From: Podarcis vaucheri
Taxonomy: Eukaryota
Reading direction: 5' to 3' (one strand)
Length of the DNA stretch: 64,000 nt
Assembly (NCBI GenBank): GCA_965113315.1
Contig: OZ220369.1
Shown in pieces: positions 36,976 to 59,222 of this stretch. The stretch's first letter is position 1; the number at the start of each line of letters is the position of its first letter. Made by a program: the position numbers and the translations under genes. The notes below the pieces were generated by a model. The model made no database searches and was not told the DNA's origin. It worked only from the letters and a program-made list of their open reading frames with translations.

Positions 36976-37812
36976 CAGTGTTTCCCAACCGGTGTTCCGC
37001 GGCACACTAGTGTGCCGCGAGATGTTGCCTGGTGTGCCGTGGGAGGGAGGCGGGCGAGGCGGGCGGCGAGAGGCGGGGCGGCGGCGGCGAGGAGAGGCCG
37101 CCCAGTGCGGGGCTCTCGCAGTCTGCCTGCCTGGCTGCCTGCGTGGCGCTGACGTCACGGGGCTGTAACGTGCCCCACATAGGCACACGCGGGGCGGCAA
37201 GCGAGCTCCCTCCCACATCCCATCGCCCCTCGCTACGGCCGGCCTACTGGGCTGTCGCAGGCGGAAGGCCTGCGCATGCGCGAGGTTTTTGCGCCTTCGG
37301 GATTCCCTTCACGCCTTCCTCCTCCCGGGTCCTTGAGAGCGCGGGAAGCGGCAGCGCGAGACCGCCGTTGAGCCTGGTAGGTATTGTGCTTGCCAAGGCA
37401 GTCATTTGGGAAATGAAAACTTGCAAAGCAAGCAACCAGTTCAATCTGAAGTACGTGTATGCTTAATATCCTGTATCTGAAACCTGTTCTGCCCCCTCCC
37501 CCACACTTGGTGCCATTTTCATCTACACATGCAGCAGAGTAAGTTGACCCAGAATAGTACCAATTCAGATGGCAGATGGGAGAATGACAGTGCTGAATGC
37601 TTTCCCATGTAGAACAGTCCCTGCAAATAAAAACCTAGCATATTTGGAAGAGGGATGCTAGCCTAACCATTACCTTCTATGCTGTTACTATTTTTTTATT
37701 TTTTTTTTACATAAGTAAAAAGTGACCTTTCCCCATCTGGCATGGTGGTGTGCCTCGAGATTTTTTTCATGAAACAAGTGTGCCTTTGCTCAAAAAAGGT
37801 TGGGAAACACTG
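36976..37812 (-). mobile_element. Cargo-carrying non-autonomous hAT element, copy B (837 bp)
   Basis: 15-bp TIR CAGTGTTTCCCAACC / GGTTGGGAAACACTG; perfect 8-bp TSD GTTTATTG (36968-36975, 37813-37820). Ends shared with 49063-50431 in opposite orientation; interior unrelated and CpG-rich. Confidence 0.93.
37146..37385 (+). promoter_or_regulatory. CpG-island promoter-like cargo within hAT copy B
   Basis: CRE TGACGTCA (37150-37157), ETS-like GGCGGAAG (37260-37267), NRF1-like TGCGCATGCGC (37271-37281), then a pyrimidine-rich leader and donor-like CTG|GTAGGT at 37377. Confidence 0.55.
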
Positions 37813-37870
37813 GTTTATTGGTTTGTTGTTTGACTGTTTGCTCCCCCAGGATCCACCCAAGGAACTAGCC

Positions 37871-38006
37871 CAGGCTTCCTCAACCTCGGCCCTCCACATG
37901 TTTTGAGACTACAATTCCCATCATCCCTGACCACTGGTCCTGCTAGCTAGGGATCATGGGAGTTGTAGGCCAAAAACATCTGGAGGGCCGAGGTTGAGGA
38001 AGCCTG
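37871..38006. mobile_element. 136-bp palindromic hAT MITE
   Basis: TIR CAGGCTTCCTCAACCTCGGCCCTCCA / TGGAGGGCCGAGGTTGAGGAAGCCTG; perfect 8-bp TSD AACTAGCC (37863-37870, 38007-38014). Confidence 0.93.
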
Positions 38007-39724
38007 AACTAGCCTATCATAGAAAGGCACCATTTATGTTCAGTGCTCTAACCACTTTCGCCTCCGTCTCTGCCCACTAGTGCCCTTTAGCCTCCCCAAA
38101 AATTACCAAGGAGGGAGCTTGGTTTTCATGCTAAACAATGTTCCCTCACCCATGGTTTATAGTGGAAACATCCATTATGTTTCACTGAACAGCTTCATGT
38201 GTTTTGTCACCATCATCATCATTATTAAAATAATTTATATACCACCTTCTATTTCAAGAAGAAATACCTTTTATGTAATGGAAAAGCAAGAGTACCACTA
38301 CATCCATTTCTTGTGTAGCAAAGACCTGCTGTGTTGCAGTTGCTGTCTTCACACTGTGAATAATTTGACTCTGCTGCTCATTATGTATTGCTTTTAAAGG
38401 TATTATTATGTGTTATTATGTGTTTATTAAATTGAATTGCATTTATAGAACTTTTAATTTTCAGCATTTTTATGGATATTACAGTATGTGTGTTCATTCT
38501 GTGGTTTATTACAGTACTATGTTGTAAGCCACCCTGTTGTCTTTTGACAAAGGACAGCCAATAAATTTCTCATAAATAAATGACCATTTGTGCCCACAGG
38601 TTTCATGCTCCAGTACAGACTTGGGTTTGAAGCATAGTTGTTTTCTGTATGCAATGCCCCTAAACTGTTTCCTGGATTGGAGCTTTGCTTGTCTTAGAAA
38701 AATCTCCATGCATGATCCAATAGAATTTTAAAGGGCTTACGAATGAGGAACGCTGGCCAGGTGTAAAAATAGAGGTTCTTCCACTTCTATTGCATGATCT
38801 GCGTGGTGCCTGGTTTTCTTCCATCTGTGCACGTTTCAGACGGTGTAATTAAAGCCACACGCTGACAAAACTGGTGCCCGGATTATGTTTGGGTCAAAGG
38901 AACCTGTGAACGGCTTGGGAAATCTTTGAAGCGGGCCAGGCTGTGAGGTGAAACAAAAGGGATGGATTGTGTTAACTTCAAAAGAAAATAAGGAATTCAG
39001 GAGCACAGGCCATCTTTGGCTGTCTGGCTACACGACAGTGCGTGGATTTTTCCGCTCTAGACTGGTGGATGCCTTTCGTTATTCTCCTTTTGTTTACCCC
39101 TAGAGCTTACGCACAGGTACAGTACAATGATCTCCCGCCAGGAGGTATGATAGATTCATCTCTTTTCTCCTCTCTCTTATCACCTTGTTATTACCTTTGA
39201 CCTCTGGGTAAATTGGATTTGGGTTTAAATTGCACAGATGCTGCGTCTCCATATTTATTCCGAAAAGGCAAAGAGTTCAGAACCTTGATACTTGGCACAC
39301 GGTGTAGAATGGACTCTTGGAAAATATGTGCAACTCACTCTTCACTATTTGCATTTATAGATTTCCCCCTAACCCCACTTCAAGCTAAAATGAATTGGGA
39401 AGAGGACATTCACAGGCAAATTCACTCAACTTCAGTACTCTTGTAAAAGCATCACATCCATATTTTCATCTGACCGTTTTGACACAGAATTTTCTATTCT
39501 TTTGGATTTAACTACCTGATCTCCCCAGCTCCTCCCCCATAGACTTCATGACATCACAGTAACTCAAAGGGGGCTTATAGATGGATAGCAGACAGTCAGC
39601 TGAATTCTTGCAATGCTGCTGTTGTCATTATCAAAACTCATCTCACACAGCATCGTTCCTGGTGGCTGCCAGGAAAGAAAAATTGTGGCCACCAGTGAGT
39701 AGCCAGAAGAAGAAACTCTGGTTT

Positions 39725-40455
39725 AGGGTGATAACATCATTCCCAAGCTTCATCTTGTCCACCCCCTGCAATGCAGGAATCACAGCTAAAGAATCCCTGA
39801 CAGATGGCCTTCCAACCCCTGTTTAAAAACCTCCAATGAAGAAGAGTCCACAACCTTCTGAGATAGTCCATTCCCCTGTCAAGCAGCTCTTACCATCAGA
39901 AAGCTCTTCCTAATATTTAGTTGGAATCTCCTTTATTGTAATTTGAATCCAATGGTTAAGGTCCTACACTCTAAAGCAGCAGAAAGAAGAAGAGTCCACA
40001 ACCTTCTGAGATAGTCTATTCCCCTGTCAAGCAGCTCTTACCATCAGAAAGCTCTTCCTAATATTTAGTTGGAACCTCCTTTATTGTAATTTGAATCCAG
40101 TGGTTAAGGTCCTACACTCTAAAGCAGCAGAAAGCAAGCTTGCTCCATCCTCCATGTGACAACCCTTTAGATATCTGAAGACAGTTATCATGTATCCTCT
40201 CAGTCTCCTCTTTACCAAACTAAATATACCCATCTTCATCAACCGTTCCTCATAAGGCTTGGTTTCCAGACCCTTGATCATCTTTCACCCTCATTTGAAC
40301 ACATGTCAGCTTGTCAATATCCTTCTAAAACTATGGTGCTCAGAACTGGACACAGGATTCCAGGTGGGCTCTGACTTAGACACTATACCTCTGTTGATGC
40401 AGCCTAGAATCGCATTCACTTTTTTGCTGCTACATCACACTGTTGACTCATGTTG
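39725..40455 (-). mobile_element. CR1 LINE ORF2 3' region with an internal 148-bp tandem duplication
   Basis: ORF 40081-40281 (MIKGLETKPYEERL..LVKRRLRGYMITVFRYLKG) is CR1 ORF2. Duplicated units begin near 39843 and 39991. Confidence 0.88.
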
Positions 40456-40611
40456 ACTTTCTCTTGAGTAGAGGAGACATTTGTTTTGGTGACCTATGTG
40501 ACCTGTTTTGGCCAATAGGCTCGGGGAAAGGGGTTGCCTATAATAGGCTTCTGCTGCGTCCTTTATTTACAAATACAAAAGAGGACTTGGAGGAGGGACA
40601 GCCTGTTCCAC

Positions 40612-40653
<42 letters not shown>
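40612..40653. repeat. (CA)n microsatellite
   Basis: Direct reading. Confidence 0.95.
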
Positions 40654-40657
<4 letters not shown>

Positions 40658-42164
40658 TCCTTTATTTTCCTGGCTGGAAAAATATTGCAACATTGAAAAA
40701 TGCACATACAATTTAGAGGGTGTCAGATATGAGCAACAGATTGAGGTCAGCAAGGAACCATGTGATAAAGTCTTAGACTTAAGGCAGAACCAGAAGGCAA
40801 ATCAGGAAGCAGGACTGAGCACTCATTGTTCTCACCACCCAGATTTAGGAGTGTGGCGTGGGAAGGGGTATGATCTGGGAAGAGGCCCAGAAGCCTGATA
40901 AAGATGAATGGAGGGTTACATTTGACCTCTAGACCTGCGGTTCTCCACCCCTGCTCTAAGCATAGTCTGGGAGCTTTGGGGTGAAAGGAGTCAGCTTATT
41001 TATTTATTTTTTCCCAGCTGCATTGTAATTTAAAGGATGGAGCACCCTAGTTATTTTCCTTTAACTTGGTTTTCTCTTCTGACAATTGCACTAACAGACC
41101 TGGTTCTATTTATGCCATGAAATTTATGTATCTTTACTAAGGGAGAAGCTCATCTATCTGCCATCCCGTGTCAGCAGAATTATAAACCTGTCAATGGCAC
41201 AGTATTTCAGAAGTGACCTATGCTGGCAGTAAACACCAATGCAAATGCTCCGATAATGTATCATGCGCAATGAAACAATTCCTGGCAAATAATAACCATG
41301 CTATGAAATAAAACAGTGGCATACTTCTGTGTCTTTAAAATAATGAAGAGCTTATACATCAACTCCCTTGAATCATTTAGAGGTTGTCTTGTTGTTGTTG
41401 CTTGAACGTTTTGTGTTTAAGAGCTCAGCATATATTTGCCTTCCTTTTTAATTCACCAACAAATGAAACTTTTACTGCCATTAAAGAGGAATCACTAATA
41501 TGGGCCAGGCAAGCACAGCACACTAGCTATAGACGTGAACTGAGGAAAGCCATGTTTATGGCCTTCCTGACACTGAGCCTCCTGGGACTCTGTGGTTGTT
41601 CTTTTCCCTTGAGAACCTAGCAGACCACAAAGCAGGGCTGGTGCATTGTATTTGACTGTGAGAATTTAAGGTGGCTTTGCATGATCTCCAGGATCAAAGG
41701 GAGCATGTGTCTGAATTAGGGATGGGCAAATCGGTCGATTTCAGTTTTTCTGCATTTTTCATTTTCCCCACACCACTCTTAAGTTCTGTCCTCCACATTT
41801 CCACATCTGTTTGCAATTAAAAACAACAACAAATCAAGTTTGCATGAAAATTCAACAGCATATTTGCACGAAACTCTCTGAACAGGTATGCAATTTTGTC
41901 CACAATCTTTCTATGCAATTTTGCCTAATATGTGCATTTTTGCACAGCGATTTCCCCTTATAAAATGTATTTCCATATGCTATTTTCACAAACACATGCA
42001 TTTCTATACAAACTTTATACTAACATACTGGTTTTTGTGTGCATTACTTGGCAGGAAAAGTGCATTGTAAAATTCAGAGAAGTGGGCCTTTTTAATAATG
42101 GCTCTGTTTCATGTCACATATTGTTTCAGAAAGTATTACTTTGGTGCTGTTTAGGACTAATCAA

Positions 42165-42625
42165 GCACTAAATGACTTGGGCCTAGGCTACCTGAAAGGC
42201 CTTATCTCCCTATATGAACCTATCCAGGTGCTAGGATCCTTGGGTGAGCACCTTCTCTCGGCCCATCGTTATCAGAAAGATGGTTGGTGATGACATGAGA
42301 GAGAGCCTCTGCTGTGGTCACTCCCAGATTATGGGATTCCCTCCCAAAAGAAGTTAGACCAGCTCCTTCTTTGCCATCCTTCCACCAGCAGCCTAAGACC
42401 TTCCTATTCAGACAGACCTTTGAAAATTAAAGTGCAGATGATATTGAACACTGGGTTGCTGTCAGGGCAAACTGTGTTTTAATTGCTGGTTCTAAATGTC
42501 TTTTGTTCTAATTTAACTATTGTTTCTAACTAGCTGTTTTTTTTTTAATCTGGTTTTATAATGTTGTTTTTAAATGCTGGAAGTTGCCTCAAAACCCAGC
42601 TTGGGAGAAAGGAGGGATATAAATA
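42165..42625 (+). mobile_element. Old L2-clade LINE 3' fragment
   Basis: Degenerate homology to the L2 3' ends (GCACTAAATGACTTGGGCC..TACCTGAA..; GGGATATAAATA tail). A related minus-strand copy lies at ~62130-62445. Confidence 0.6.
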
Positions 42626-44844
42626 GATTAAGTAATAATAATACAAGCTTAACTGAATTTCTACTCTAAATGTCAGGAGAATAGCAAGAATTTACTATTG
42701 CGCTCATGTCCTGCATGTGTCCTTCCCATAGGCATCTGGATGGTGGATGAAATGGATCCTTGTTCTGGTTCTATTTTCTTATTTGATGGACAGAGTCATC
42801 CTGAATCAAGGGTGGTACTCAATACTAGTCCTACCCAGAGTAGACTCACTGAAATTAATGGGCATGGTTAACTTAGGGTCATGAATTTCAATGGGTCTAC
42901 TCTGCGTAGGACTTAGTTGGCAGCAACCCAAATATTTCTAATGAGTAATGAGTTATTTTCTTCTTTACTTCTGCGTTAGCCGCACAGCATTGTCCTCTTA
43001 CTTTTAGCCGATTTATAAATATTCTCCTCCCATTAAGATTTTGTTCCCTGGAGTCTTTTTTCCAATCCACCACACTCTTCCCCATGTTGATAATCAATTT
43101 GTTGCTTCAACATGCTCAAGCTGAAAATTAATCAGGGCCCTTTGAAAGTCTACAAACGGCACTCACATGTTGTAGGAATGTCTTACAAGGATAAGTCAAA
43201 TTAGTGTAACCAGCACAAATTAGCTCCGTTTCAGAAGGCGTGTAACCCAGCAAATCCCATCTTTCACTCACTGCATGCCATAGGATTATGAAGGATTTGT
43301 CTTATAACAGAACAGCTAATTACATCTACACATTTAGAGCATTGCTGTTTTTGCCATCAACATTCAAAGACTGAGACATTCCATTAAATGATTAAGTGTA
43401 TTGAATCATTGGACTTCATTCTGCTCAGTATTACAAGGAAACTAACCCAGACAGGGCATACAATGAAATGCAAATGTTAAATACTTAATCCTTTGACTTA
43501 TGTATTTATCCAGAACTGGTCTTCTGGGAATCAAACATCTTCCCTCCTGCTGCAGCATTCCTTTGGAAAGCAATAGGTTCAAGCACAGTAGGTCACCTGT
43601 AGGGATGAGTGAATTTGCCAAATTCGTTTTCTGACGGTTTCTCGTTTTTCCACTTTTAACAGCTCTCCACATGCAGCTTGTGGTTTCTTTTTCAAAGTCC
43701 TCATGAAAATCCAACAACATTTAGTGCAAACTTCTCCTGATGTTGCCTAAGATACACATTTTTGCAATGCAATTTCTCCTCATAGAATGCATTTTAATGT
43801 TGTTTTTACTAATATATGCATTCCTATGCACACTGTAGTATATAGATTTTTGATCACGTTACTTGGCTGGAAAACTGTACTACAAAATTCAGAGAAGTGC
43901 AAAGTTTGAAGGATGGCTGGGTTTCACTGTGGGTAAAACTAAGAAACTCAAAATTACAGAAGAAAATCTGGCAGTGCTCAGAACTTTCCCTCAAAAGCAG
44001 TTCACTTATACCTCGCTGCAAAAAAAGACATAGAGGGGCAGAAAAATGCAGAGAGACTGAATTGTGAGCCTTTTCCCTGTGTACATTCTTACTCTCTCCC
44101 ATGTCCCATAATTAAACCAGGAATTCTCAAATTAATTACAGATTTCCATTTCATCAGAACTGGGAAACTATGGTTACCAGTTTTAAAACAAGCCAGGATA
44201 TTTAACCAACTTCAGACCATGTTTTCATATCTTGGCTTGTTCTAAAACCCTCGTTTCCTGGACATGCATCACACAGGAAACAATGGTTAGCTGAAGACTG
44301 CTGGGTTTCATTGCTGGCTCAAGCAAAAGGAGGGAGAAGCAAAGGGGCTACATGCACCACCCAAAGGCTTGCGCATATTTCACCTTATTAAGCTGAGATG
44401 TGATCATCTGAATTTGGCCAGTAAAAGGATGTCAAAACATGGGTTAGATTGAACTGGATGTTGTGGACGGGGCAAGGGTAAATAACACACGCCTGCCATT
44501 TTCAGCAACGGTCCTACTGTCAGACTTGGGTCTCTCACACACACGCACAACAGCTCTAAAAGTTAATTATTTCAGATTTATTGGCTCTTTAAAAAGCCCT
44601 GGTTGGAGCTCAGCTAATTTCAGTCTTCTTCCAATGACACAGTTGCCTGAACTAAGCTCCGCCCCCTTTTCCCCCAATAGGAAAAACGCCACTTTCTCTT
44701 CCGATTAGTTTGGCGCTTCTTGTTTAATCTTGTGATTCTACGAGATCTTGGAGATTGTACTCCCACTATTTCTGTGTCTGCGTCACTATCTGAGTTCTGC
44801 AGCTGTATTCCTGCTCTGTGTCTCTCTGCTTTCCTCTGTGTGTA

Positions 44845-45104
44845 CAGTGGTACCTCGGGATGCAAGCGGGATCTGTTCCGGAGCCCTGTTCGCATCCCGA
44901 ATGGAATGCAAGACGCGACGGCGCATCTGAGCATGTGCGAGTCGCGTTTTGCCGCTTCCGCGCATGCGTGTGATGTCATTTTGAGCATCCGCGCATGCGC
45001 AAGCGGCGAAACCCAGAAGTAACGCGCTCCATTACTTCCTGGTTGCCGCGGAGCACAACTCAAATGCGCTCAACCCGAAGCACATTCAGTTCTAGGTATG
45101 ACTG
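44845..45104. mobile_element. Tc1/mariner (Tigger-like) MITE, CpG-rich
   Basis: TA|CAGTGGTACCTCG start, AGGTATGACTG|CA end; interior contains GCGCATGCG repeats. Confidence 0.75.
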
Positions 45105-45287
45105 CACGAAGGTTGGATTCCTGTGGCTAATTGCTCCCCGCCCCCCCCACTAAGGAATTCTCTCTGTTCTTCCACTGTCTCTGTCCCTGTCCTGCCTGTC
45201 AGAGAGTCTCGTTCTCTGACACCAACTTTCTTGCAGTGTTGTCTTCCCTGCTATGCAGAATCCTCAAGGAGCCTGAATCAGTGCATG

Positions 45288-45500
45288 AGAGCCAGTGTGG
45301 CGTAGTGGTCAGCATGTCAGACGAGGCCTTGGGAGGCCAGGGTTCGAATCCCCACTCAGCCATGAAGCCCATGGGGTGAGCATGCCTCTCTGCCTAACCA
45401 GAGAGTTGTTGTGAGGATAAAATGGAGAGGAGGGAGAACGATATACACCACTTTGAGCTCCTTGGAGAATAAGGTTGGGCATAAATGTAATAAACAAATA
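45288..45500 (+). mobile_element. CORE/MIR-like squamate SINE
   Basis: A box TGGCGTAGTGG, B box GGTTCGAATCC, body shared with 53634. Confidence 0.8.
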
Positions 45501-45905: not shown

Positions 45906-45946
<41 letters not shown>

Positions 45947-47237: not shown

Positions 47238-47479
47238 CAGTGGTGCCTCGGGTTACATACGCTTCAGGTTACATACGCTTCAGGTTACACACTCCGCTAA
47301 CCCAGAAATAGTGCTTCAGGTTAAGAACTTTGCTTCAGGATGAGAGCAGAAATTGTGCTCCGGTGGCGCGGCAGCAGCAGGAGGCCCCATTAGCTAAAGT
47401 GGTGCTTCAGGTTAAGAACAGTTTCAGGTTAAGAACGGACCTCCGGAACGAATTAAGTACTTAACCCAAGGTACTACTG
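47238..47479 (+). mobile_element. Tc1/mariner (Tigger-like) MITE
   Basis: TA|CAGTGGTGCCTCGGGTTA...TAACCCAAGGTACTACTG; four copies in the window. Confidence 0.9.
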
Positions 47480-47480
47480 T

Positions 47481-47838
47481 GGTGGCGCTGTGGGTTAAAC
47501 CACAGAGTCTAGGACTTGCCGATCAGAAGGTCGGCGGTTCGAATCCCCGTGAGGGGTGAGCTCCCGTTGCTCGGTCCCTGCTCCTGCCAACCTAGCAGTT
47601 CAAAAGCATGTCATGTGCAAGTAGATAAATAGGGACCACTCTGGTGGGAAGGTAAACGGCGTTTCCGTGTGCTGCTCTGGTTCACCAGAAGCGGCTTAGT
47701 CATGCTGGCCACATGACTCGGAAGCTGTCTGCGGACGAACGCCGGCTCCCTCGGCCTATAGAGCAAGATGAGCGCGCAACCCCAGAGTCAGTCACGACTG
47801 GACCTAATGGTCAAGGGTCCCTTTACCTTTACCTTTAC
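47481..47838 (+). mobile_element. Sauria SINE
   Basis: Homologous to 20514 and 56683; (ACCTTT)n tail. Confidence 0.92.
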
Positions 47839-49848
47839 CACTGTATTGTGGATTTCACATACGCCCCATCAGCACTTTACATTCAAAGCAGTATCACGCC
47901 ACTTTAAACGGCCATGGCTTCCCCTGAAGGATTGTGTCAATCTGAAGTTTGTTACACACTCCTCTACCTAGGCAAGCAAAAGGCAGTATCAGACAGCAAG
48001 GACATATTCCAGCCAGGCATAAACACCCAAGGAGGGCACAAAGCACTGCTGATGAGAGGTGTGTCTAGGGAGGGTGTGTGGCCTTGCACTCATCACCGCT
48101 CATCCCAACCAAGGTTTGCATCTCATCAAAAATGCTTGGTGCTTTTCTTCAAAGAACCTCCCATTTGCAGAGAGTAAATTGGGAGCATCCAAAATGGAAT
48201 TGCTGGTAGTTGAATGAATGGAACACCAACCACCACAAAAGAAAGAGGGGAGGGGGAACCCGGGAGAGTGTGTAGGAAAAGTAGACAAATCAGGAGAAAT
48301 AATGTCAACAAACTCCTGCAGATACGCGAGGAAATCCAAAATCCAGCAGTGCAAGCAGATGGCTGTAAAAGCTGTGCGATGAAACAGATTACTGGGGGCT
48401 CACCCAAACAGAGAGCTCGCAAATGAAAACAAGGCCCTTTTTTTTTACCATGTTGGAGAACAGGATGTAAGAAAGCTGTTCGGATATTAAGCAGAGAGAG
48501 TTAAACGAGGGGAGATGTGCAAGGATTTTAGAAATCCGCAAGGCTCAATTGTCAGACTCCTGACTGAAATCTCAGCCTGTTCATATCCACAAAGCAAAGC
48601 CTCCTTTGCTTCCTCCAGGGCTCTCATAACTTCTGAGAAAAACCTGCTCTGAGTGCTCCTGTTGTCTGAAGGATGGTAGGCTTGCCTCACCGTTGATCTA
48701 TACAAATGATTTACCCACAAAAACCCATGTGTTTCAGTGGATAGACTTGGCATCCGCTGTGAATTACTATGCAGGATTCAAACACAAGCACTCTCCCCTC
48801 CTGTGGTTTCCAGCAACTGGTATTCAGAAGCATTTACTGCCTCCAGCTGTGGCAGCAGAGCAGTCATCATAGAGAGTAGCCATTGATAGCCCTCTCCTCC
48901 ATGAATTTGTCTAATCCTCCTTTAAAGCCATCCAAGTTGTTGGCCATCAATGCCTCCTGTGGAAGGGAGTTCCATAGTCTAACCATGCACAAAGAAATCC
49001 TTTCCCTCCCCCTCCCCTCTGTCCCAAATCTTCCAACATTCAGCTTCATGGGATGTCTAGTGCAGTGTTTCCCAACCTTTTTTGGGCAAAGGCACACTTG
49101 TTTCATGAAAAAAATCTCGAGGCACACCACCATTACAGCCCCGTGACGTCAGCGCGCAGCGTCACGCCGGGAGGGACATGAATTGCTAGCAAATTACATA
49201 ATCACCTCCTTGAGGGCTGGCTCATCTTCTCCGAAGGCAGAACCCCATTAATTAACAGCACAGACTCACACCATAGCCAAGACGAGGGGGGAAAACCTCA
49301 GTCATGCACAGTCATGCACATGTGGGGGCTAAATGAGGATGAAGACCGGGCAGAGATCAGGGTTCAAATCACCCCACCTGGCCAGGACAATCCCTGGGTG
49401 CTCCCTTGGGCCACTCGCCTGACCCACCTCGCAGGGCTGTTGTTGCGAGGATAACACGGGGAGAACCACGCGCGCCCCCGGGAGCTCCTTGGAGGAGAAA
49501 GCGGGCGATGAATGCAATGCACGAAATATATGAGAGGCGACCAGGTTTTGCAGGTGAGGGGCCCCCGCCAGCCTCCACTTCCAACACCCGGCGCAACGAC
49601 GCCGAAGTTTTCCCCCGGGCTCGGCTCGGGGAGCAGCGCTGCTCCCCCCCTGGCTCCCCTTCGCCCTCCCGGCTCTCTCTGCCGCCCACTGGGGACCCCC
49701 CTCACCTGCCAAGTCCGGAGCGCCGGTGGAAGTTGCATGCATGCATGGCCTTGCACGCCCGCCAAGGGGTCTCCCCACGGTCCGATGCGTCCCCTCCGGC
49801 GCGGATGCAGCATTGCAAAAATAACACACACACCCGACGCAGCCCTAC

Positions 49849-49905
49849 CTGGGGGGCAGCCTCCGCCTCCGCCGCTCCGCCTCCGCGGGGATCCCCGGGC
49901 TCCAT
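49849..49905 (-). pseudogene. Putative captured first coding exon (MEPGDPRGGGAAEAEAAPQ) inside hAT copy A
   Basis: Strong Kozak context GGCGGCAGG-ATG-G, 19 codons, then a phase-0 donor CAG|GTAGGG, with GC-rich leader and promoter-like sequence upstream. Parent gene not recognised. Confidence 0.55.
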
Positions 49906-50050
49906 CCTGCCGCCTGATCTCCGCGGGGGCGCAGGCAGGCTGCGCGGGGTCTGCGCGGAAGAGCCCCTGCCCGCCCGGCCGCCACCGCTGCGCTCATTCC
50001 ATGGCCGGGAGAAGAGCGCTTCAAACAAAACGCCCGGCCCGCCAGGCCAC

Positions 50051-50126
50051 GCTGGGAAACGTAGTTCGTGCACCCCGTGCAGGCGCGGAGCCCAAGGGCG
50101 AGGGGACTACGGATCCCGGCAGCCCC
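50051..50126. promoter_or_regulatory. Divergent pair of ZNF143/SBS-like (ACTAC-N-TCCC) motifs within the cargo
   Basis: GCTGGGAAACGTAGTTC (50051-50067, reverse) and GGACTACGGATCCCGGCAGCCCC (50104-50126). Confidence 0.5.
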
Positions 50127-53100
50127 CATGCCGGGGACGGAGGAGGAGAGGCCGGGTGCAGGGATGGAGGGACGGGTGGGCGAGCGAGCAAGTGGCAGCC
50201 GCCAAGCCTTGGCCGAGAGCCAGGAAGGGCCTCCCTGGAGGAGGAGGAGGAGGAGGGAGGCGCAGAGTGGGAGGGAGGGAGGGAACCCCAGGGGTCATCT
50301 AGTGACGGCGCCCCAATCGAAAATTTGACTTTAAAAAAAAATCTTTCGAATTTTTTAATTTTTCCCGCGGCACACCAGGCAACATCTCGCGGCACACTAG
50401 TGTGCCGTGGAACAGTGGTTGGGAAACACTGGTCTAGTGTTACAAGAGCGGGAGAAATACTTTCTCTATTCACATTGAGACAGAAGTCAGGGGAATGGTG
50501 TCAAGATACAGGCCGGGATGAACAATGTAAGCCAAGTGTGTATCAATAGCTAAACCAATACTTACACAGACGAATGAGATTTCTACAAATACCTGGCTGT
50601 TAGCTTGCATCGCAGGGGAAATTTGGAACCACTGACTGTCATGAAAATTGTCAAGTGGTGGGAAATATGTGTGCACTTCACACTTCTGGTTCGCTCCACC
50701 ACTAACCTTATCAGGGGCGCTTGCAAAGCAAGTCTCTGGAAAAGAAATTCTAAACAAATAGGCTAAAAGTTAGCAAATAGCAAAAGGAGTTCCCAACAAT
50801 CATCTGATATACAGAACGCCCCTCAAGCAATTTGCACTTGGCGGTTCAGCAGGGTGGAAAGGAAACATAACTGGGGGTTTGGAAGCTACAAAGCTGTAAA
50901 AGAAACTGGGAATTTGTGGAAAGGAATTCAGATCAGCGAAGAGTGGCTAAGAACGATAGGGTGACTTTGGAGCAGAAATAGCCTTTTAAGAGAGAACAAA
51001 TATGCTCATATATAATGTTTACATATTTAAATGGAGGTCTCAGCTACACGATGCATTTATCCTGATTTTGTGCCACTTTTAAGTCATGGTTTTCTCCCCC
51101 GCCCTGGCTCTACTGAATGCTGGAAACTGTAGTTTGCTGTGAGTGCTGGGGATTGTTTGAAGTCTGCTACCCATCTCAAAGAACTACAATTCCCAGGGTT
51201 CTTAGGGAAGAGGGATTGTTTGTTAAACCAGTCTGATTAAGATTAAATTAAATTTAAATTATTATTTAAAAATAGAAAATGCTTCACAGCATAATTTATA
51301 GACTGCTTTACAGCATACAGCCATCAAAGCAGTATACAAGAGAAAAACAGAGTATCCAGGAGTTGCAAGGACAAACTGGTTTGAGCAGGGGTTGAAGCCA
51401 TTTAAGAGAAACGCCATCACACAGACTTGTTTGTGAACGTCTCTGTTATCCAAATGATGGTGAGTGACTCTCCCCACCCAGACTGGTCACTGGATCCTGC
51501 TGGGCAGGAAGGAACGTGAGCACTTCCTGTTACAAGCTGAGCCTTCTTCAGGTACTTCCGAGGTTTGGGTGTGTTCCTGCAGGGATTTTGTAATAATGTT
51601 TGTGGAAAAGTGGAAATTTCAGGAGGGACTAGAATTAAGAAACGTGGCACCATGCAAATGTTGATGGAGGCAGTGGAGGCACAAAGAGCAGGAAGGGTAG
51701 AGGTGCTTGAAGAAGCAGAATACTCCCATATTGTGGAATTCCCTCCCAAGAGACGTTAGACTGGCTCCCTCTTTGCTATCCTTCCGCCATCAGGCTAAGA
51801 ACTTCCTAATCAGGCAGGTCCTATTCAGACAGCATGTGCTCAGAATAGCTTCAATAACCTGGCATTAATAAACCTGAGTTTTCTTACATCCTTTCAACAA
51901 TAAGTCTTACCAGGCTATTTATACCTGCACCCTGATGCAATATTTACCAAACTCCAACAAGACTGAGTTGGGTTTCAGGCAGAGTTCTCTCTCCCAATCC
52001 TTACCTGGAGATGCCAGGGATTGAACCTGGGACCTTCTGCATACAAAGCAGATGCTCTACCACTGAGCTAAGGGCCTTTCTGCTAAATAGTCCATCAAAG
52101 GCTCTGAAGGTAAGGACAAGGGTTTCCTTAAAGCAGGCAGGAAGCCACTGCATTGATAACTAGGAACACATACAATGAAAAGCAACTTCTAAGAGACTGA
52201 TATGCAAGGTCAGAGACAACCAAAGGGCTGTTGGGGTGGGGGGGATAATTAGCCCAGTTAAAAGAGAGATGGGGGGAATCACTGAAGTGAAACCAGCTAT
52301 GACTAAGGGCCATAAAGCAAACTGTGAGATGCAATGGTCTGATTATGCTTTTTTGACCTCTGTGGACCATCAAGACCAGAGCTGCCATTTACAATGTCAA
52401 GCAAACCGGGACGAACAAGCACAAATTTGCATAAGATATCCAATCGGCAATTTATCCATAGAAGTTGCTTACCCAGGGAGCAGTGTTGAGAGGGTCAGAT
52501 CTGCAGGCACTCATCAATATCTTCTTTTCGTTTCCTTTACAAAAGGAAAAAAGACCTCTCAGACCTACAAACAGCAGCCTAAGGCTGTGTGCACATTCGA
52601 AACACATTATTTCCCTCAAAGAATTCTGGGCACTGTAGTTTATCTCTCACAGGGTTACAATTCCCAGTATCCCTTAACAAACTACAATGCCCAGAATTCT
52701 TTGGGGGAAAGCTTGTGCTTTATAGTGTGTCTTTAGCCTCAGTTAGCTCCATCTCCTCCAAAACATGAAGCTGCTTGAGGCCAGTGTTGAGTCCTTGTTG
52801 CTTGGAGTCTACAGGAGAAGATGGTTCCACACAACTGGGAATTCCTATTCTCCTGTTACTTCAAATGACCCTCACCAATGAGCAAGTGAATCAATGGTAC
52901 AAGAAGAGTAGAGAATGTCAACTCTGGAAGCCACAAGAAGCCCAGCCAGCGGTCAGAAACAAATCCAAGTGTTACTTCAGGAAGGCATCTGAGTTAAGTT
53001 CAGGACAGAAGTCAAGAAGGCAGCGATGGAAGCCAAGGGAGACCTGTAAAAAAAGGCAGCTCAGGACTTACCACCACCCTGAGATAGGCAGATGAAAATT

Positions 53101-53160
53101 CTAGCCAATCAGAAACTGGGGAAGCTCCGTTGTCACATGAAGGCACCTGAGATTAAAGAG

Positions 53161-53292
53161 CCAGGAATCTTTTTCAGCCTGGAGGATGTATTCTGCATGA
53201 AGGCAACCTTCTGAGGACCCCAAACCAGGAATCTTTTTCAGCCTGGAGGATGTATTCTGCATGAAGGCAACCTTCTGAGGACCCCAAACCAG
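53161..53292. repeat. 64-bp perfect tandem duplication
   Basis: CCAGGAATCTTTTTCAGCC...GAGGACCCCAAA begins at 53161 and again at 53225. Confidence 0.95.
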
Positions 53293-53633
53293 TAGTGCGA
53301 CTGTCCAAAATGGGCAGGTTAGTGGGTGTACCTCTTAACTTTGTTTATGGGGGAACATTTCAGCCATGCAGACATCACAAACCCAATTACTTATGTCTCT
53401 CTGTTCTCCATCCAGACAAGCCAGAGACATGATAACAGTCCAAGGACACATTCCAGTTAGACAGAAGCACTCCAGGTGAGGGTGGAGCAAGGCAAGTGAG
53501 GGGTGTGGTGTGGCCTGAGGAGCATTGTGGGGGGTACAGAGACTGGGGTGCTGCATTCAGCCCCTGTGCCTGAGCTTCCCCACCCTTGTTCTCCGGCTGC
53601 TTCTTCTTGGTCATCCACTTATCCCTAAGTGAG

Positions 53634-53865
53634 AGTCAGCATGGTGTAGTGGTTAGACTGTTGGACTAGGCCCTGGGAGACCAGGGTTCAAATCCCCACT
53701 CAGCCTTGAAGCTCACTGGGTGACCTTGGGCCAGTCCCTGCCTCTCAGCCCAACCTACCTCACAGTGTTGTTGTGGGGATTGATGGAGGAGTGTGGGAAG
53801 CACATACGCCGCCTTGAGCTCCTTGGTCGAAAAAAAGAAAAAAGTTTGTTATAAATGAAATGAAT
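53634..53865 (+). mobile_element. CORE/MIR-like squamate SINE
   Basis: TGGTGTAGTGGTTAG A box, GGTTCAAATCC B box, CTGGGTGACCTTGGGC core. Confidence 0.85.
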
Positions 53866-53885
53866 TTGTCAATATGAACTAGATA

Positions 53886-54662
53886 CAGTGGTACCCCGCA
53901 AGACGAATGCCTCGCGAGACGAAAAACTCACAAAACGAAAGGTTTTTTCGTTTTCGAGTTGCCTCGCAAGACGAATTTCCCTATGGGCTTGCTTCGCAAA
54001 ACGAAGCTTGCCCCGGGGACAGCGGGTCTTCTCTTTTGAAGCAAGGAGCGGCGGGGAGAAGCAATCTTCTGCCCGCAGCCCCAGGTCCGGGGACAGCGGG
54101 AAGTGCTTCCCGCTGCCCCCGGACCTCTTTTGAAGCAAGGGGCGGCGGGGAGATAGCTTCTCCCGGTGCTCCGAAGCGGGGCGGGGGGGCGGGAACACCT
54201 GCCCCAGCCGCCCCGCTTCGGAACGCTGCTCCGAAGCGGGGCGGGGGGGGACACCTTCTGAAGGCGGGCGGGGGCCGAAAGTCTTTGTCCCCCCTGCCTG
54301 CCTTCCCAGGGGCTTTTAAATCGCCCCGGACAGCGGAGAAGTCCTCCGCTGTCCCGGGGCGATTTTAAAATGCCGCCCGCCAGCATTTTAAGATCGCCCG
54401 GACAGCGGAGAAGTCCTCCGCTGTCCCGGGTTTTTTTAAAATGCTGGGGGTGGGAAGAAAAGCCCTTGTGTCCCCCCCCCCAGCCTTCAGAAGAGGTCCG
54501 GGGACAGACTGTCCCCGGACCTGGTCTGAAGGTGGTTTCCCAAGGAAAGCATTAATTGATTTTCAATGCATTCCTATGGGAAACCGTGCATCGCAAGACG
54601 AAAAACTCGCAAGACGAAGAGACTTGCGGAACGAATTAATTTCGTCTTGCGAGGCACCACTG
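53886..54662. mobile_element. Tc1/mariner (Tigger-like) non-autonomous element with GC-rich hairpin interior
   Basis: TA|CAGTGGTACCCCGCAAGACGAA ... TTCGTCTTGCGAGGCACCACTG|TA, with subterminal CGCAAGACGAA repeats. Confidence 0.92.
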
Positions 54663-55163
54663 TACACTTCTCAACTTACCCCCCCCCCAACACACAGCAG
54701 GAGATAGCTTGGACACATAATATATAGGGATTAATCAGGGAATAGCAGTACTCCGTATTGGTAGGCAATACGAAGGAATTTATAGTCCAATGCTGTTTCA
54801 CTTTTAAAAATTCATTTAACTAGGGTCCACATTCTATGGACAGTGTTGGAGTCCTTCTAAAAAAAATAATGACTACTCATCTCTTTTCAACCAGTCATTC
54901 AGTTTGGCTGACAAGCATGAAGGATGCTGAATACAGTGATCTCCCAAATATCCAACTGAAGAATTAATCAGCCATGACTTCTTAATATTCTGCATTTTCT
55001 GGGAGGTTCTGCAGATGTGCGTGAAACACACAACAACCAGCTTTACTTCCGTTCCTCTTTGCTGTATGCTTTGATTGAATAATGGACCCAGGAACCCTCT
55101 CTTTTGAGTGGTGGTTGCTAATATTAAAATAACTGGAATAATAATAATAGTCAGTGTTTATAG

Positions 55164-55585
55164 CAGGGGTCGGCAACGTTTTTTGAGGCCAGTCTGGTCC
55201 ACACCCCAGCAGACCTCTTGGTGGGCCGGAATGTGTGCGCCCGAGCATGTGCTCAAGCTATTTCCGGTGCTCTTCCAGATCGGAAGAGTGCCAGAAATAG
55301 CATGTGCGCATGCGCATGGGCGCTCCTCTGTCCCAGAAGTGTGCCACAAATAGCATGTACGCACGCGTACGGGTGCTCCTCCAGGTGAGGAGCGCCTGTG
55401 CGCATGCGCACATACTATTTCCGGCGCTCTTCCGACCTGGAAGTCAGTCCCTGTGTCAAGGAAAAAAATGGCACCACGAAAAAGAAGCATGGAATCCCCA
55501 CACCAATCCACGGAATGGTCGTGGGCAGGTTCCAGGGAGCTCATGGGCCAGAACCGGCCTATGGGCCTTAGGTTGCCGACCTCTG
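55164..55585. mobile_element. hAT MITE with NRF1/ETS-motif-rich interior
   Basis: TIR CAGGGGTCGGCAAC / GTTGCCGACCTCTG; perfect 8-bp TSD GTTTATAG (55156-55163, 55586-55593). Confidence 0.92.
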
Positions 55586-56682
55586 GTTTATAGGCACATT
55601 ACGCTGCATGTGCCTGGTTTATAGGCACATTACTCACATTTGAGTAAGTTCCAGATGTTGTTGGACTCCCAACTCCCATCAGCCCCAGGCAGTGTGGCCA
55701 ATGTCCAAGGATGATGGAAGTTGTGGTTCAGCAGCACCTGGAGAAGCCACTGGTTCTGCATTCTGGCTGTAAAGAGAATGATGGATATATCTTTCTTTAT
55801 GCAAGATAGGGATGAGTTAAATTATTACAAGATTGAAGCATGAGTATGAATCCCACCGTTTTCACAACTTATACCCAAATGTATGCTTTTTCTTCCTAGG
55901 TTTAGGAAGATAAGGAGAGCCTAGCTGGATCAGGCCAATGACCCCTTCTAGTCCAGCATCCTGTTCTCAAACTGACCAACAGCTGCTTGTGAGTAACCCG
56001 CAAGCAGGGTCTGAGTGCAAGATGTGCTTTCCCCACTTGGGATTCTCAGCAAGTATCCAGGTATTCAGATACATACTACCTCCAACACTGAGGTGGAGCA
56101 CAGCCATTGTGGCCTTATCCTCCATAGTGGATGTGCTTGGTGAATATCTGGGGGAACATATTCAGAGCCGGCATACCACCACTGAAAAGGCCCTGTTCCT
56201 TGTAACATCCTCCACACCTCAGATGGCAAGGAACCTGCTTACTTCCTTCTGGAAATTCCACTTCGGTTAGCTACATCCTGGTTGTAGCCCTCCTCCAAAG
56301 GCCACATCCACACCATACATTTAAAAGCACAAATAATCCTGGGAACTGTAGTTAGTTAAGGGTGCTAGGAGTTGTAGCTCTGTGAGGGATCCCCTAGCAA
56401 CTCTCTGGAATTGAACCTGAGACTGCCTGCTTACTACTCAACTACAGCCCTTTCCCATCATTGTAGAATATTTAAATCTTCTGGGCCTGTTTTCCATTCT
56501 GTGCTGTTGGTGTTGTATTCCTTTCAAGGGGTTGTTTTATTCTTGTAAGCTGTACTGAGTGTTGCAAATGCATTTGAAAGGTGGGACAGGCACATTCCAA
56601 ACAAACACTCAGATTGGAAATGCCAACAGTGAGGACAGGATAAGAATCTAACGAGACCACATAATAAGTGTTCTCTAACTTA

Positions 56683-57035
56683 GGGATGCAGGTGGCACTG
56701 TGGGTTAAACCACAGAGCCTAGGGCTCGCCGATCAGAAGGTCGGCGGTTCGAATCCCCACGACGGGGTGAGCTCCTGTTGCTCGGTCCCTGCTCCTGCCA
56801 ACCTAGCAGTTTGAAAGCACGTCAAAAGTGCAAGTAGATAAATAGGTACCGCTCCGACGGGAAGGTAAACAGCGTTTCCTTGTGCTGCTCTGGTTTGCCA
56901 GAAGCAGCTTAGTCATGCTGACCACATGACCCGGAAGCTGTACGCCGGCTCCCTCGGCCAATAAAGCGAAATGAGCGCCGCAACCCCAGAGTCAGCCACG
57001 ACTGGACCTAATGGTCAGGGGTCCCTTTACCTTTA
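56683..57035 (+). mobile_element. Sauria SINE, full length
   Basis: GGGATGCAGGTGGCACTGTGGGTTAAACC head, GGTTCGAATCC B box, CCTTTACCTTTA tail. Confidence 0.93.
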
Positions 57036-58699
57036 GCTTAGGGTCAGCCCTACCATTAGGCAGAGCAAGGCCACTGCCTCAGGTGACATATCCTGGGAGG
57101 TGCTGGTGACCCTGAGCTCCCTGACCATACCCTTCTGTGGGAAAAGAGAGCTGTGTATCACGCATCTTGTTCTCTTCCCTTATAAGTATCCTACTGACCC
57201 CCTTCAGGGGCAGCGTGGTGCCCCATTGCTAGCACTGGAGTAGAATTCACTACTGTGTGTTTGCGTGCGTGTGTGCCTGTCTCCATGCGCCATTTTGTCC
57301 TTTGCCTCAGGCAGCAAAATATATTGGACTGACCTTGTTCCGGCTCTCAGACTTTTGTTACCATTTTCCCATTCCTCACCAAGGACTAGAAACTTGTTCC
57401 CTCTCCTTGCCCTTCTCCTCTGCACTAGCCGCACTTTGTGAGCAGCTGCAGCATAACGATACAAAGGAGGAAAAGCCCTTAACACTTTTCATTCTCCCCC
57501 TCCGTTTGTGTTTTTGGAGACAGTCCTTGACTTCTGTCCTCTGGGTGTTTTCTCTAATTAGTTATGATGGAGCATTAGGAGGTGCAAGGGCAAGAGATTG
57601 TGGGAGGAGAGTGACTCCTTAATAAGCATGAGTTCATTGGCCATCCCTCCCCGCCTCCCATTCCGGCCCTCGCCCAGCCTTCTCCATCACAAGCTGCTTG
57701 CTGCTTGTTATGAAATAAGAGGAGGTGGAGGGGGTGAAACCATCCTAAAAGGGAATGAGATAGAAGGGGCTTTGTGCCAGCCTGACACCCGGTGGGCCTT
57801 CTGTCTTGCCAAAACCACTCATTAGATCCGCTCGAGCAAAGTGTGAGGAGCATGCTGATTCTGCAGCTGCCGCCGAATTTGTCATGTCCTGCAATGGTGG
57901 AATCGCAATCAGGATCCCTTCCCACACAACGCTGCTTAGCTCACCATGCAAGCACAACAAAACGCCCACTTCAGGACAGGTTTCCAAAAATTGATGGCCC
58001 TCTCATCGTAAAAACAAACGGGCAGGAACACTGGAAGCTGCCTTGTACCAAGGTCTCGTTTGCACTGTGCACTGAAAGTACAACACTACCACTTTGAATA
58101 GTCATGGCTTCCCCCCAAGAATCTTGGGCACCGTAGTCTGTTAAAAGTGCCACTGACCTTGCAGATCTACAGTTCCCAGCATCCTTAATAAACTACAGTT
58201 TCCAGGCCTCTCCATGGCCACATTCACACCACATATTTAAAGCACTGTGATACAACTTTAAACAGTCCCACCTCCCTGCACCAAGGATTTGGGGAACTGT
58301 AGTTTTTTAAGGGTGCTGACAGCAGTTAGGAAGAGACCCCTGTTTCAGAGATTTGCAATCCCCAGAGGTTCCTGAGAAGATAAATTGATGGTTAAATCAC
58401 TCCGCAGACTGTAGCTTTGTAAAGGCAATAGGAAGGTCTTCTAACAACTCTAAGCACCCTTAACATACTACAGCTCCCAGAATACTTTGGGGGGGACCAT
58501 AGCTGTGGCCCTCAGAAGATTGCCTAGATGGGAAAATGGCCCTTGGGCTTAAAGAAGTGTCCCCCCCCCACCTCTGGTACAAATGACCACCTATGTAGTC
58601 TTATGTGGTTTGATCAATTTTGTTTAGACAAGAATCCAAAAATTCTATTATCACTTTGGTCACTGACAGAATTACAAGGTGATATTGTAAGAACTTCAG

Positions 58700-59020
58700 A
58701 AGATAAGAAGAGCCCTGCTGGACCAAGCCAATGGCCCATGTAGTCCAGCATCCTCACAGGGGCTACCCAGATGCCTGTGGGAAACAGGCAGGCGCGACTC
58801 AAGTACAAGAGCTTTCTGCTTCCCTGTGGCTTCCCGCAAGTAGTATTCAGGTATTCAGAAGCAATGCTGCCTCTGACTTTGGAAGGAAAGGACAGCCATC
58901 ATGGCTAGCGGCCACTGATAGCCTTGTCTGCCATGAATTTGTCCAATCCTCTTTTAAAGGTTTCCAAGTTGGTGGCCATCACTGCCTCCTCTGGGAGTAA
59001 GCTCCATAGTCTAACTATGA
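58700..59020 (-). mobile_element. CR1-type LINE 3' end
   Basis: Homologous to 10435-10755. Confidence 0.75.
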
Positions 59021-59120
59021 CTGGATCTACGCTGATCTGTAAAAACGCTTTTTTTAAAAAAAAACCTGTGATATAGCTCTCAATTCAATTTTCAATTAAT
59101 GGCAGATCATTGCTCTAGAA

Positions 59121-59222
59121 CAGTGTTTCCCAACCTTTTTTGGGCAAAGGCACACTTGTTTGATGAAAAAAATCTCGAGGCACACCACCATTACAGCCCC
59201 GTGACGTCAGCGCGCAGCGTCG
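59121..59222 (+). mobile_element. hAT cargo-family copy C, left end only (runs into gap)
   Basis: About 100 bp nearly identical to 49063-49163; preceded by CTCTAGAA. Confidence 0.88.

What the first reader, a model, noticed from the sequence alone, without database searches (positions are those of the whole stretch)
36976..59222. A 'Pack-hAT' family: identical transposon ends carrying different CpG-island promoter or first-exon cargo
Seen: three copies (B 36976-37812 minus, A 49063-50431, C 59121-gap) share a 15-bp TIR (CAGTGTTTCCCAACC). A and B share ~70 bp at one end and ~70-93 bp at the other, with repeated GGCACAC subterminal motifs. Each has a perfect, different 8-bp TSD (GTCTAGTG, GTTTATTG), so each moved as one unit with its interior. 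Their interiors are unrelated, lack transposase, and are CpG-dense in an otherwise CpG-depleted window. Established: 8-bp TSDs with NTCTAGAN-like targets typify Charlie-group hATs; plant Pack-MULEs preferentially capture GC-rich 5' gene fragments. Inference: this lizard family may capture and disperse host promoters and first exons, a promoter-shuffling system that is poorly described in vertebrates. I cannot confirm novelty without a literature and database check.
Basis: partly seen in the sequence, partly recalled or inferred. Interest (0 to 1): 0.88.

Follow-up and report, generated by a model that had tools for sequence, protein, structure and literature searches.

The report
Lizard hAT transposons with promoter-like interiors
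Three copies of a very abundant, young, transposase-less hAT transposon sit in this lizard window; two carry different CpG-rich segments built like gene 5' ends, but one of those segments is a repeat present hundreds to thousands of times, and no source gene could be found for either.

Summary
The sequence facts hold. There are five exact 15-bp TIRs, two perfect 8-bp TSDs, shared ends of about 70 bp, GGCACAC subterminal motifs, no transposase, and CpG-island-grade interiors.

- **Copy B.** Public reads show its whole interior is high-copy in three related lizards, at hundreds to thousands of copies. A second copy at another locus has a different flank. B looks absent from this site in two sister organisms. 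So this interior does travel with the ends, but it is a transposon subfamily consensus, not a one-off capture. Whether it came from a host gene or from the element itself is unresolved.
- **Copy A.** Its cargo is low-copy. It reads on the minus strand as ZNF143-type box, ATG exon of 19 codons, splice donor, and intron holding an old SINE that kept its CpGs. This is probably host DNA.
- **What is missing.** No TIR-free parent was found for either cargo. No promoter activity was seen in one RNA run.
- **Reasoning error.** TSDs alone do not show that cargo moved with the ends, because in-situ gap filling gives the same picture.
- **Weak evidence.** Promoter motifs and CpG richness also occur in other young transposons in this window.

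Pack-hATs in vertebrates are already described (Tan et al. 2021), so this is a new member of a known kind. The scan flagged similar elements elsewhere in this genome; those notes are unchecked.

The parts
36968..36975 (.). TSD of copy B, left (GTTTATTG)
   Evidence: identical to 37813-37820
36976..37812 (-). Copy B, 837 bp, element orientation opposite to A
   Evidence: The whole length is high-copy in three organisms. About 10 sites differ from the family majority.
36976..37044 (+). B end homologous to A's right end (69 bp, 94%), with TIR, the palindrome CGCGGCACACTAGTGTGCCGCG and 3 GGCACAC sites
37045..37145 (+). GC-rich stretch of about 100 bp with GGGCGG boxes, between the end and the CRE module
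   Evidence: Depth falls stepwise from the TIR inward.
37146..37168 (-). 23-bp CRE module (TGACGTCA) shared with A and C
37169..37376 (+). B promoter- and exon-like CpG-rich part: GGCACAC at 37182, NRF1-type box GCGCATGCGC at 37272-81, ending at CTG|GTAGGT
   Evidence: There is no depth step at 37168/37169 in X1 or X4. P0016 carries the same segment at another locus.
37377..37741 (+). B intron-like part: 41% GC, about 1 CpG in 360 bp
   Evidence: Single contigs lie at about 320-370 times unique depth in X2. No Pfam match.
37742..37812 (-). B end homologous to A's left end (71 bp, 98.6%)
37813..37820 (.). TSD of copy B, right
49055..49062 (.). TSD of copy A, left (GTCTAGTG)
49063..50431 (+). 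Copy A, 1369 bp
49063..49167 (+). A left end (71 bp) plus CRE module and its short inverted-repeat extension, shared with C over 101 bp
49168..49848 (-). A cargo, intron-like part; 49360-49535 is an old SINE copy that kept its CpGs
49849..49905 (-). A cargo, ATG plus 19 codons (MEPGDPRGGGAAEAEAAPQ), ending at donor CAG|GTAGGG
   Evidence: This stretch reads identically in the Logan relative P0001.
49906..50362 (-). A cargo, leader and CpG-island promoter-like part, with a ZNF143/SBS-like box at 50046-50065. The last ~70 bp (50295-50362) is AT-rich and of unknown origin.
50363..50431 (+). A right end (69 bp)
50432..50439 (.). TSD of copy A, right
59121..59222 (+). Copy C, left 102 bp only, then the assembly gap; target CTCTAGAA at 59113-20

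Best explanation
A, B and C are recent insertions of one very abundant, non-autonomous, Charlie/SPIN-like hAT family. Its ends are present in the order of tens of thousands of copies per genome in at least three closely related lizards. Members share about 70-bp ends with GGCACAC repeats and a CRE-containing module, but their interiors are mosaic.

Copy B belongs to a large subfamily. The consensus of that subfamily already includes the promoter-, exon- and intron-like segment, so the segment is mobilised in trans with the ends.

Copy A carries a low-copy 1.2-kb piece. It is most likely host DNA from a CpG-island gene 5' end: promoter, first coding exon, donor, and intron 1 with an old SINE.

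Inferred mechanism: template switching to ectopic DNA during repair or replication of the element (gap filling or FoSTeS-type), followed for B by transposition catalysed by an unseen autonomous hAT.

Shown: the family, its ends and TSDs, B's multicopy state, and a second B locus.
Inferred: the host origin of the cargoes, the capture mechanism, and any promoter function.
For: Family and hAT hallmarks.

B is high-copy. Summed contig depth over 37170-37740 is hundreds to thousands of times the unique flanks in X1, X2 and X4. In X2, single contigs at 37368-37497 and 37550-37672 have depth 2817 and 3195 against 8.7 for unique sequence. About 10 sites differ where every contig differs from this copy.

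Independent B-type copy: P0016 has a different flank, then the TIR, then the same interior.

Likely empty site in sister organisms. X2 and X4 contigs stop matching at 36968 but run on 80 and 68 nt. In X2 that lands at the same break (37893) where an X1 contig ends.

A cargo anatomy: SBS-like box, ATG exon, donor. It holds an old SINE about 70% identical to four window copies, with CpGs where the others have TG/CA. Close relatives exist, at about one contig per run in about 24 Logan contigs, which means low copy.

No transposase remnants.

Precedent for hAT capture in animals and in a lizard: PMC8277862, PMC3014272.
Against: - No TIR-free parental copy was found for either cargo.
- B's interior carries a further GGCACAC site at 37182. 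It also shows no depth step at the supposed cargo junction and a U-shaped depth profile. This is what a deletion series from a longer native element would give.
- NRF1-type and SBS-type boxes and CpG richness also occur in unrelated young MITEs in the same window.
- RNA coverage is flat and on both strands, with no start sites and no step at the donor.
- Copy numbers come from summed contig depth, which the tool warns is not a copy number.
Confidence: 0.55

Rival explanations
1. B's interior, and possibly A's, is native transposon sequence: the promoter, untranslated first exon and start of intron 1 of a longer, intron-bearing autonomous hAT. On this reading B is an ordinary internal-deletion derivative and nothing was captured.
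For: - B's interior is a family consensus at high copy.
- Depth declines gradually from both ends to a minimum near 37500, as in a deletion series.
- There is no depth step at 37168/37169 in X1 or X4.
- A subterminal-type GGCACAC site lies at 37182.
- P0016 shows further internal deletions.
- Most Anolis non-autonomous hATs are deletion derivatives (PMC3014272).
Against: - No transposase-like open frame or Pfam hit was found anywhere in A or B.
- A and B have unrelated interiors, so one autonomous parent cannot explain both.
- A contains an old host-type SINE with preserved CpGs.
- The Charlie-like hATs listed for Anolis are compact, 2.2-2.8 kb (PMC3014272 table).
- The switch in B from CpG o/e near 1 to near 0 exactly at a donor site looks like a host CpG-island edge.
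Confidence: 0.25
2. A's cargo was never mobile. A plain short element inserted here, making the TSD, and a later break inside it was repaired by copying a nearby or distant host CpG island. This is the transposition-independent gap filling that Tan et al. describe as the main route in animals.
For: - The TSD is equally expected under this model.
- The A-type interior is low-copy, about one Logan contig per run.
- Only 4 of the animal Pack-TIRs in PMC8277862 are multicopy; the rest are single-copy, attributed to gap filling.
Against: - C shares 101 bp with A, including 8 bp beyond the module that B lacks, so it could be a second A-type copy. The gap hides the answer.
- The lengths of most Logan contigs that hold A-like ORFs (1170-1406 nt) fit an interior bounded by high-copy ends. 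This is also compatible with orthologous copies.
Confidence: 0.3
3. The gene-like features are chance. The interiors are just young GC-rich transposon DNA whose CpGs have not yet decayed, and the boxes, ATG and GT sites mean nothing.
For: - Other young MITEs in the window are CpG-rich and carry GCGCATGCGC or ACTACAATTCCCA boxes.
- GGTAGG-type donors are common by chance.
- There is no RNA evidence of exon use.
Against: - In B, CpG density changes from about 12 per 100 bp to 0-1 per 100 bp at the donor itself. Uniform youth cannot explain that.
- In A the box, leader, ATG, open frame and donor come in the right order and spacing, followed by a SINE-bearing intron-like stretch.
- An SBS-like box is expected about 0.005 times by chance in 1.2 kb (my own estimate).
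Confidence: 0.12

Closest known systems
Pack-TIR / Pack-hAT elements of animals (Tan et al. 2021, PMC8277862)
   Same: Both are non-autonomous TIR elements, mostly hAT (208 of 370), whose ends enclose duplicated host DNA. One Xenopus case, hAT-N8_XT, carries a 5'UTR fragment in three copies with distinct TSDs. The proposed origins are gap filling and FoSTeS followed by transposition.
   Different: Those cases have an identified unique parental copy, and almost all are single-copy. Here no parent is identified, and B's interior is present at hundreds to thousands of copies. No 5'-end or CpG-island bias is described in the parts of that paper I read.
Pack-MULEs of rice and other plant Pack-TYPE elements (PMC5861414, PMC8903248; Jiang et al. 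2011 from my own knowledge)
   Same: Shared ends with varied gene-fragment cargo, a preference for GC-rich 5' gene parts, and amplification of some chimeras.
   Different: Different superfamily (Mutator, 9-10 bp TSD, long TIRs) and kingdom. Parents are known for Pack-MULEs.
Anolis carolinensis non-autonomous hAT families (Novick et al. 2010, PMC3014272)
   Same: 8-bp TSDs of the NTCTAGAN type and a YARNG terminus. The TIR of hAT-N3_AC, CAGTGGTTCCCAACCT, differs from ours at one base. Eight 'orphan' families share only TIRs with any autonomous element. hobo_AC relatives incorporate filler DNA that includes other TEs.
   Different: No promoter or first-exon cargo is described there. Family identity with any Anolis family was not tested, because no Repbase or Dfam library was available.
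Helitron capture of promoters and first exons in vespertilionid bats (Thomas et al. 2014, from my own knowledge, not checked here)
   Same: A vertebrate DNA transposon that amplifies host promoter, 5'UTR and first-exon fragments to many copies.
   Different: Helitrons use a rolling-circle mechanism with no TIRs or TSDs, and capture by read-through rather than by repair.

Membership tests
hAT superfamily (non-autonomous member) | 8-bp target site duplication | tested here: met
   Two perfect 8-bp TSDs
hAT superfamily (non-autonomous member) | Short TIRs with a 5'-YARNG terminus | tested here: met
   CAGTG...; a 15-bp perfect TIR occurs 5 times; criterion as stated in PMC3014272
hAT superfamily (non-autonomous member) | Mobilised by a transposase with an RNase-H-like core and hAT dimerisation domain | not testable with these tools
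   No transposase ORF in the window; the genome was not searchable
Charlie/SPIN-like hAT group | NTCTAGAN-like target and a CAGTGnTTCnCAAnC-type TIR | tested here: met
   Targets are GTCTAGTG, CTCTAGAA and GTTTATTG. The TIR is one base from hAT-N3_AC and close to SPIN and hAT-HT3 (PMC3014272 table). This rests on resemblance only; there is no transposase phylogeny.
Pack-TIR (criteria of Tan et al. 2021) | Internal sequence of 100-5000 bp flanked by both ends of one TIR element | tested here: met
   A has about 1195 bp and B about 700 bp between the shared ends
Pack-TIR (criteria of Tan et al. 2021) | A unique parental copy elsewhere in the genome (at least 90% identity, 80-120% of the length) not flanked by TEs | not testable with these tools
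Logan ORF relatives of A exist, but their flanks are unseen. For B the interior is multicopy, so a unique best hit is unlikely.
CpG-island promoter | Longer than 200 bp, GC above 50%, CpG o/e above 0.6 | tested here: met
   36901-37500 has o/e 0.90; 49351-50450 has o/e 0.76
CpG-island promoter | Transcription starts and a spliced first exon | tested here: inconclusive
   B only, with one bulk RNA run from a sister organism. Coverage is flat at 10-16 reads on both strands, with no start clusters and no step at 37376/37377. A was not tested.

The most novel reading that the evidence does not exclude
This lizard hAT family repeatedly acquires CpG-island 5' ends of host genes (promoter, first exon, donor). 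It then amplifies some of them to hundreds or thousands of copies, seeding the genome with portable promoter/first-exon modules. That scale and 5' bias would go beyond what is reported for animal Pack-TIRs. Unchecked notes from other windows of this genome name POLR2H, PKD2, RANBP9 and CDK5R2 fragments in similar elements.
Probability: 0.3. Interest if true: 0.75.

Novelty: new member of a known kind. Interest (0 to 1): 0.45.

Why it matters
Suppose the cargoes are host 5' ends and B-type copies number in the thousands. This would then be by far the most amplified Pack-type DNA transposon seen in an animal, and a natural system for spreading CpG-island promoters and splice donors. That bears on exon shuffling, new transcription starts and chimeric transcripts in squamates. 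If B's interior is native transposon sequence, this is an ordinary young MITE family with one probable transduplicate (A). In that case its main value is for repeat annotation, and as a caution against calling CpG islands or promoters in lizard genomes without masking young DNA transposons.

Tried and rejected
The DNA around the Logan ORFs P0001-P0016 could not be fetched, so A's junctions in other runs remain unseen.
- **ORF spanning A's right junction:** no homologue.
- **Exact-pattern scans for both ends:** 0 hits in metagenome contigs and genome contigs. This was expected, since those collections are microbial.
- **The search of earlier findings by sequence:** blank for both cargoes.
- **Pfam on all ORFs and open frames of A and B and on ten other long ORFs of the window:** nothing.
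- **Rfam:** only two tRNA-like SINE heads outside the elements.
- **HMMER against 1.84 billion representatives with B's 85-aa open frame:** one weak hit, E = 7e-4, in a repeat-rich 1039-aa protein. I dismissed it.
- **'B is a 264-bp mini-element plus a later 573-bp insert' (serial capture):** I dropped this idea. The 37167->37742 joints match only about 22 nt on the module side, so they come from A/C-type copies. Depth also shows no step at 37168/37169 in X1 or X4.
- **Whether A's SBS-like box belongs to the SBS-bearing TE families of the window:** no extended similarity.
Full report
**Observation**

The 15-mer CAGTGTTTCCCAACC occurs five times exactly: at 36976 (+), 37812 (-), 49063 (+), 50431 (-) and 59121 (+). 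Shuffles give 0.3.

- Copy A (49063-50431) is flanked by GTCTAGTG on both sides.
- Copy B (36976-37812, opposite orientation) is flanked by GTTTATTG on both sides.
- Copy C starts at 59121 after CTCTAGAA and runs into the 200-N gap at 59223. No right end follows.

A and reverse-complemented B share 71 bp (98.6%) at one end and 69 bp (94.2%) at the other. A and C share 101 bp at 99%. GGCACAC occurs 20 times in the window, against 7 expected, and 14 of those sites lie in the three copies. One end carries the palindrome CGCGGCACACTAGTGTGCCGCG.

No ORF or open frame of A or B matches Pfam. The window holds no transposase.

CpG o/e is 0.74 over A and 0.95 over the GC-rich half of B, against 0.30 for the window.

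So the description is accurate, with three amendments:
- A 23-bp module with a CRE (TTACAGCCCCGTGACGTCAGCGC) is shared by all three copies. It abuts the 71-bp end in A and C but lies 573 bp further in for B.
- Twelve other CpG-rich patches exist. All that I read (44751-45200, 47251-47900, 53901-54700, 55151-55600) fall in other young transposons or SINEs.
- The TSDs show that the two ends inserted together. They do not show that the interior was already there.

**Anatomy of the interiors**

A, read on the minus strand, runs in this order:
- a ZNF143/SBS-like box at 50065-50046;
- a leader;
- ATG at 49905;
- 19 codons (MEPGDPRGGGAAEAEAAPQ);
- CAG|GTAGGG at 49849/49848;
- a CpG-rich, then CpG-poorer, intron-like stretch.

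The intron-like stretch contains, at 49360-49535, a copy of the window's SINE family. It is about 70% identical to four other window copies. It keeps CpGs where they have TG or CA. That is what long residence inside an unmethylated island would give.

B, read on the plus strand, runs in this order:
- the end;
- about 100 bp with GGGCGG boxes;
- the CRE module;
- a GGCACAC site at 37182;
- an NRF1-type GCGCATGCGC at 37272;
- CTG|GTAGGT at 37376/37377.

CpG density falls from about 12 per 100 bp to 0-1 per 100 bp exactly at that donor, and GC falls to 41%.

Both gene-like units point the same way relative to the element.

**What public reads add**

I laid window:36700-38100 on Logan contigs of three DNA runs from three coded organisms and on raw reads of one RNA run.

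*B's whole interior is high-copy.*
- Unique flank contigs have depth of about 84-200 (X1), 8.7 (X2) and 50 (X4).
- Summed depth over B's ends is 3.1 million, 0.5 million and 1.5 million respectively.
- Summed depth over 37170-37740 is 75,000-630,000 (X1), 2,800-16,000 (X2) and 126,000-657,000 (X4).
- The tool warns that summed depth is not a copy number. But single X2 contigs inside the 'intron' (37368-37497 and 37550-37672, with 1 and 0 mismatches) have depth 2817 and 3195 against 8.7, which is roughly 320-370 copies.
- At about ten sites (for example 37059, 37106, 37199, 37365, 37790) essentially every contig carries a base different from this copy. So B is a roughly 1% diverged member of a family whose consensus includes the interior.

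*Depth profile.* Depth falls gradually from both ends to a minimum near 37500. It shows no step at 37168/37169 in X1 or X4. The joints 37167->37742 match only about 22 nt on the module side, so they come from A/C-type copies. I therefore do not support the companion idea that B is a mini-element with a second, later insert.

*Likely empty site in sister organisms.* X1 contigs cross both junctions of B without mismatch. The X2 and X4 flank contigs stop matching at 36968, the start of the TSD, yet continue 80 and 68 nt. For X2 that is exactly what an empty site would give up to 37893, where an X1 contig also ends. This suggests B is absent at this site in the sister organisms. It is an inference, because the corresponding joint was not among those listed.

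*RNA.* Coverage is flat at 10-16 reads on both strands across the 'exon' and 'intron' alike. There are no start clusters.

**Independent check through ORFs**

*B-type.* B's 144-aa ORF finds one Logan ORF, P0016. It reads: unrelated flank, then the TIR (QCFPTGVLRHTS), then the same interior. It has a deletion of about 95 nt near the end. This is a B-type copy at another locus. B's interior therefore travels with the ends.

*A-type.* A's 298-aa ORF finds four clusters, P0001-P0015, on about 24 contigs of 0.9-1.4 kb.
- They map to 49508-50192 with 94-100% identity within frames.
- All carry about 69 nt that A lacks.
- P0001 reads identically through the ATG exon; I did not compare the others there.
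- About one contig per run, assembled over more than 1 kb, means the A-type interior is low-copy.

Whether these are the parent locus or orthologous A-type elements cannot be told.

**Interpretation**

The family is a non-autonomous hAT: 8-bp TSD, YARNG terminus and NTCTAGAN-like targets. Its TIR is one base from Anolis hAT-N3_AC and close to SPIN and hAT-HT3 (PMC3014272).

A's cargo is best read as host DNA from a gene 5' end. I put this at about 0.7.

For B the evidence is split.
- For a host origin: the CpG-island edge at a donor, and the absence of any coding remnant.
- For a native origin: the extra GGCACAC site, the deletion-series depth profile, and the lack of a junction step. These fit native sequence, or a very early capture that became the subfamily master.

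Promoter boxes are weak evidence in this genome.
- A different hAT MITE at 55164-55585 (TSD GTTTATAG) has GCGCATGCGC palindromes.
- Tc1-like MITEs at 44846-45100 carry the same box.
- The very abundant hAT MITE at 37872-38006 (TSD AACTAGCC) carries ACTACAATTCCCA.
- SBS-like boxes occur nine times in the window, mostly in repeats.

**Mechanism**

Template switching during repair or replication of the element is the established route for such chimeras. In animals most are single-copy products of gap filling inside a resident element, and only four multicopy cases were found (PMC8277862). A could be either kind. B, if it was captured, is of the transposed and amplified kind.

**Novelty**

Pack-hATs in vertebrates, including a multicopy 5'UTR capture in Xenopus, and filler-DNA capture by lizard hATs are already published. 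This is a new member of a known kind.

The scale of B-type amplification and a possible 5'-end bias would be new if host origin is shown. Other first-stage notes on this genome report similar elements and name host genes (POLR2H, PKD2, RANBP9, CDK5R2). I could not check them and do not count them as support.

Noticed in passing
window 37872-38006: A 135-bp palindromic hAT MITE (TIR CAGGCTTCCTCAACCTCGGCCCTCCA, TSD AACTAGCC) lies 60 bp from B. Its summed read depth (up to 14 million in X1) exceeds even that of the hAT ends under study. It carries ACTACAATTCCCA (ZNF143/SBS-like) boxes on both arms. Loose ends show a sister family beginning CAGTGTTTCCCAAACTTGGGTCTCCAGC.
   Followed up: partly
window 55164-55585: Another non-autonomous hAT (TIR CAGGGGTCGGCAAC, perfect TSD GTTTATAG). 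Its CpG-rich interior is a 57-nt inverted repeat built around GCGCATGCGC (NRF1-type) palindromes. So promoter-type boxes occur in clearly transposon-structured DNA here.
   Followed up: partly
window 44846-45100, 47238-47480, 53875-54665, 59423-59646, 61561-63349: Several Tc1/mariner-like MITEs with TACAGTGGTACCTCGGG-type termini. They are CpG-rich, and some carry GCGCATGCGC boxes. One pair has 221-nt arms at 90% (61570-61790 and 63088-63308).
   Followed up: no
window 36982-37075 and 37734-37827 (RNA run X23): RNA reads over the family's ends show a 2-3:1 strand asymmetry (first mate on + against -). The neighbouring palindromic MITE is 1:1. This could reflect orientation bias within genes or element-driven transcription.
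   Followed up: no
window 37207-37209: About two-thirds of the RNA reads (19 of 29-31) carry a 3-base variant (TCC to GAG) that is almost absent from the DNA contigs of the same organism. One or a few variant copies, or a related locus, seem to supply much of the RNA.
   Followed up: no
window 36094-36152 (+) and 52014-52070 (-): tRNA-like Rfam matches, probably heads of tRNA-derived SINEs.
   Followed up: no
Read laying depth, X2 against X1 and X4: B-type interiors make up about 1-3% of the family's ends in organism B but about 17-20% or more in organisms A and D. This suggests lineage-specific expansion of the subfamily.
   Followed up: no
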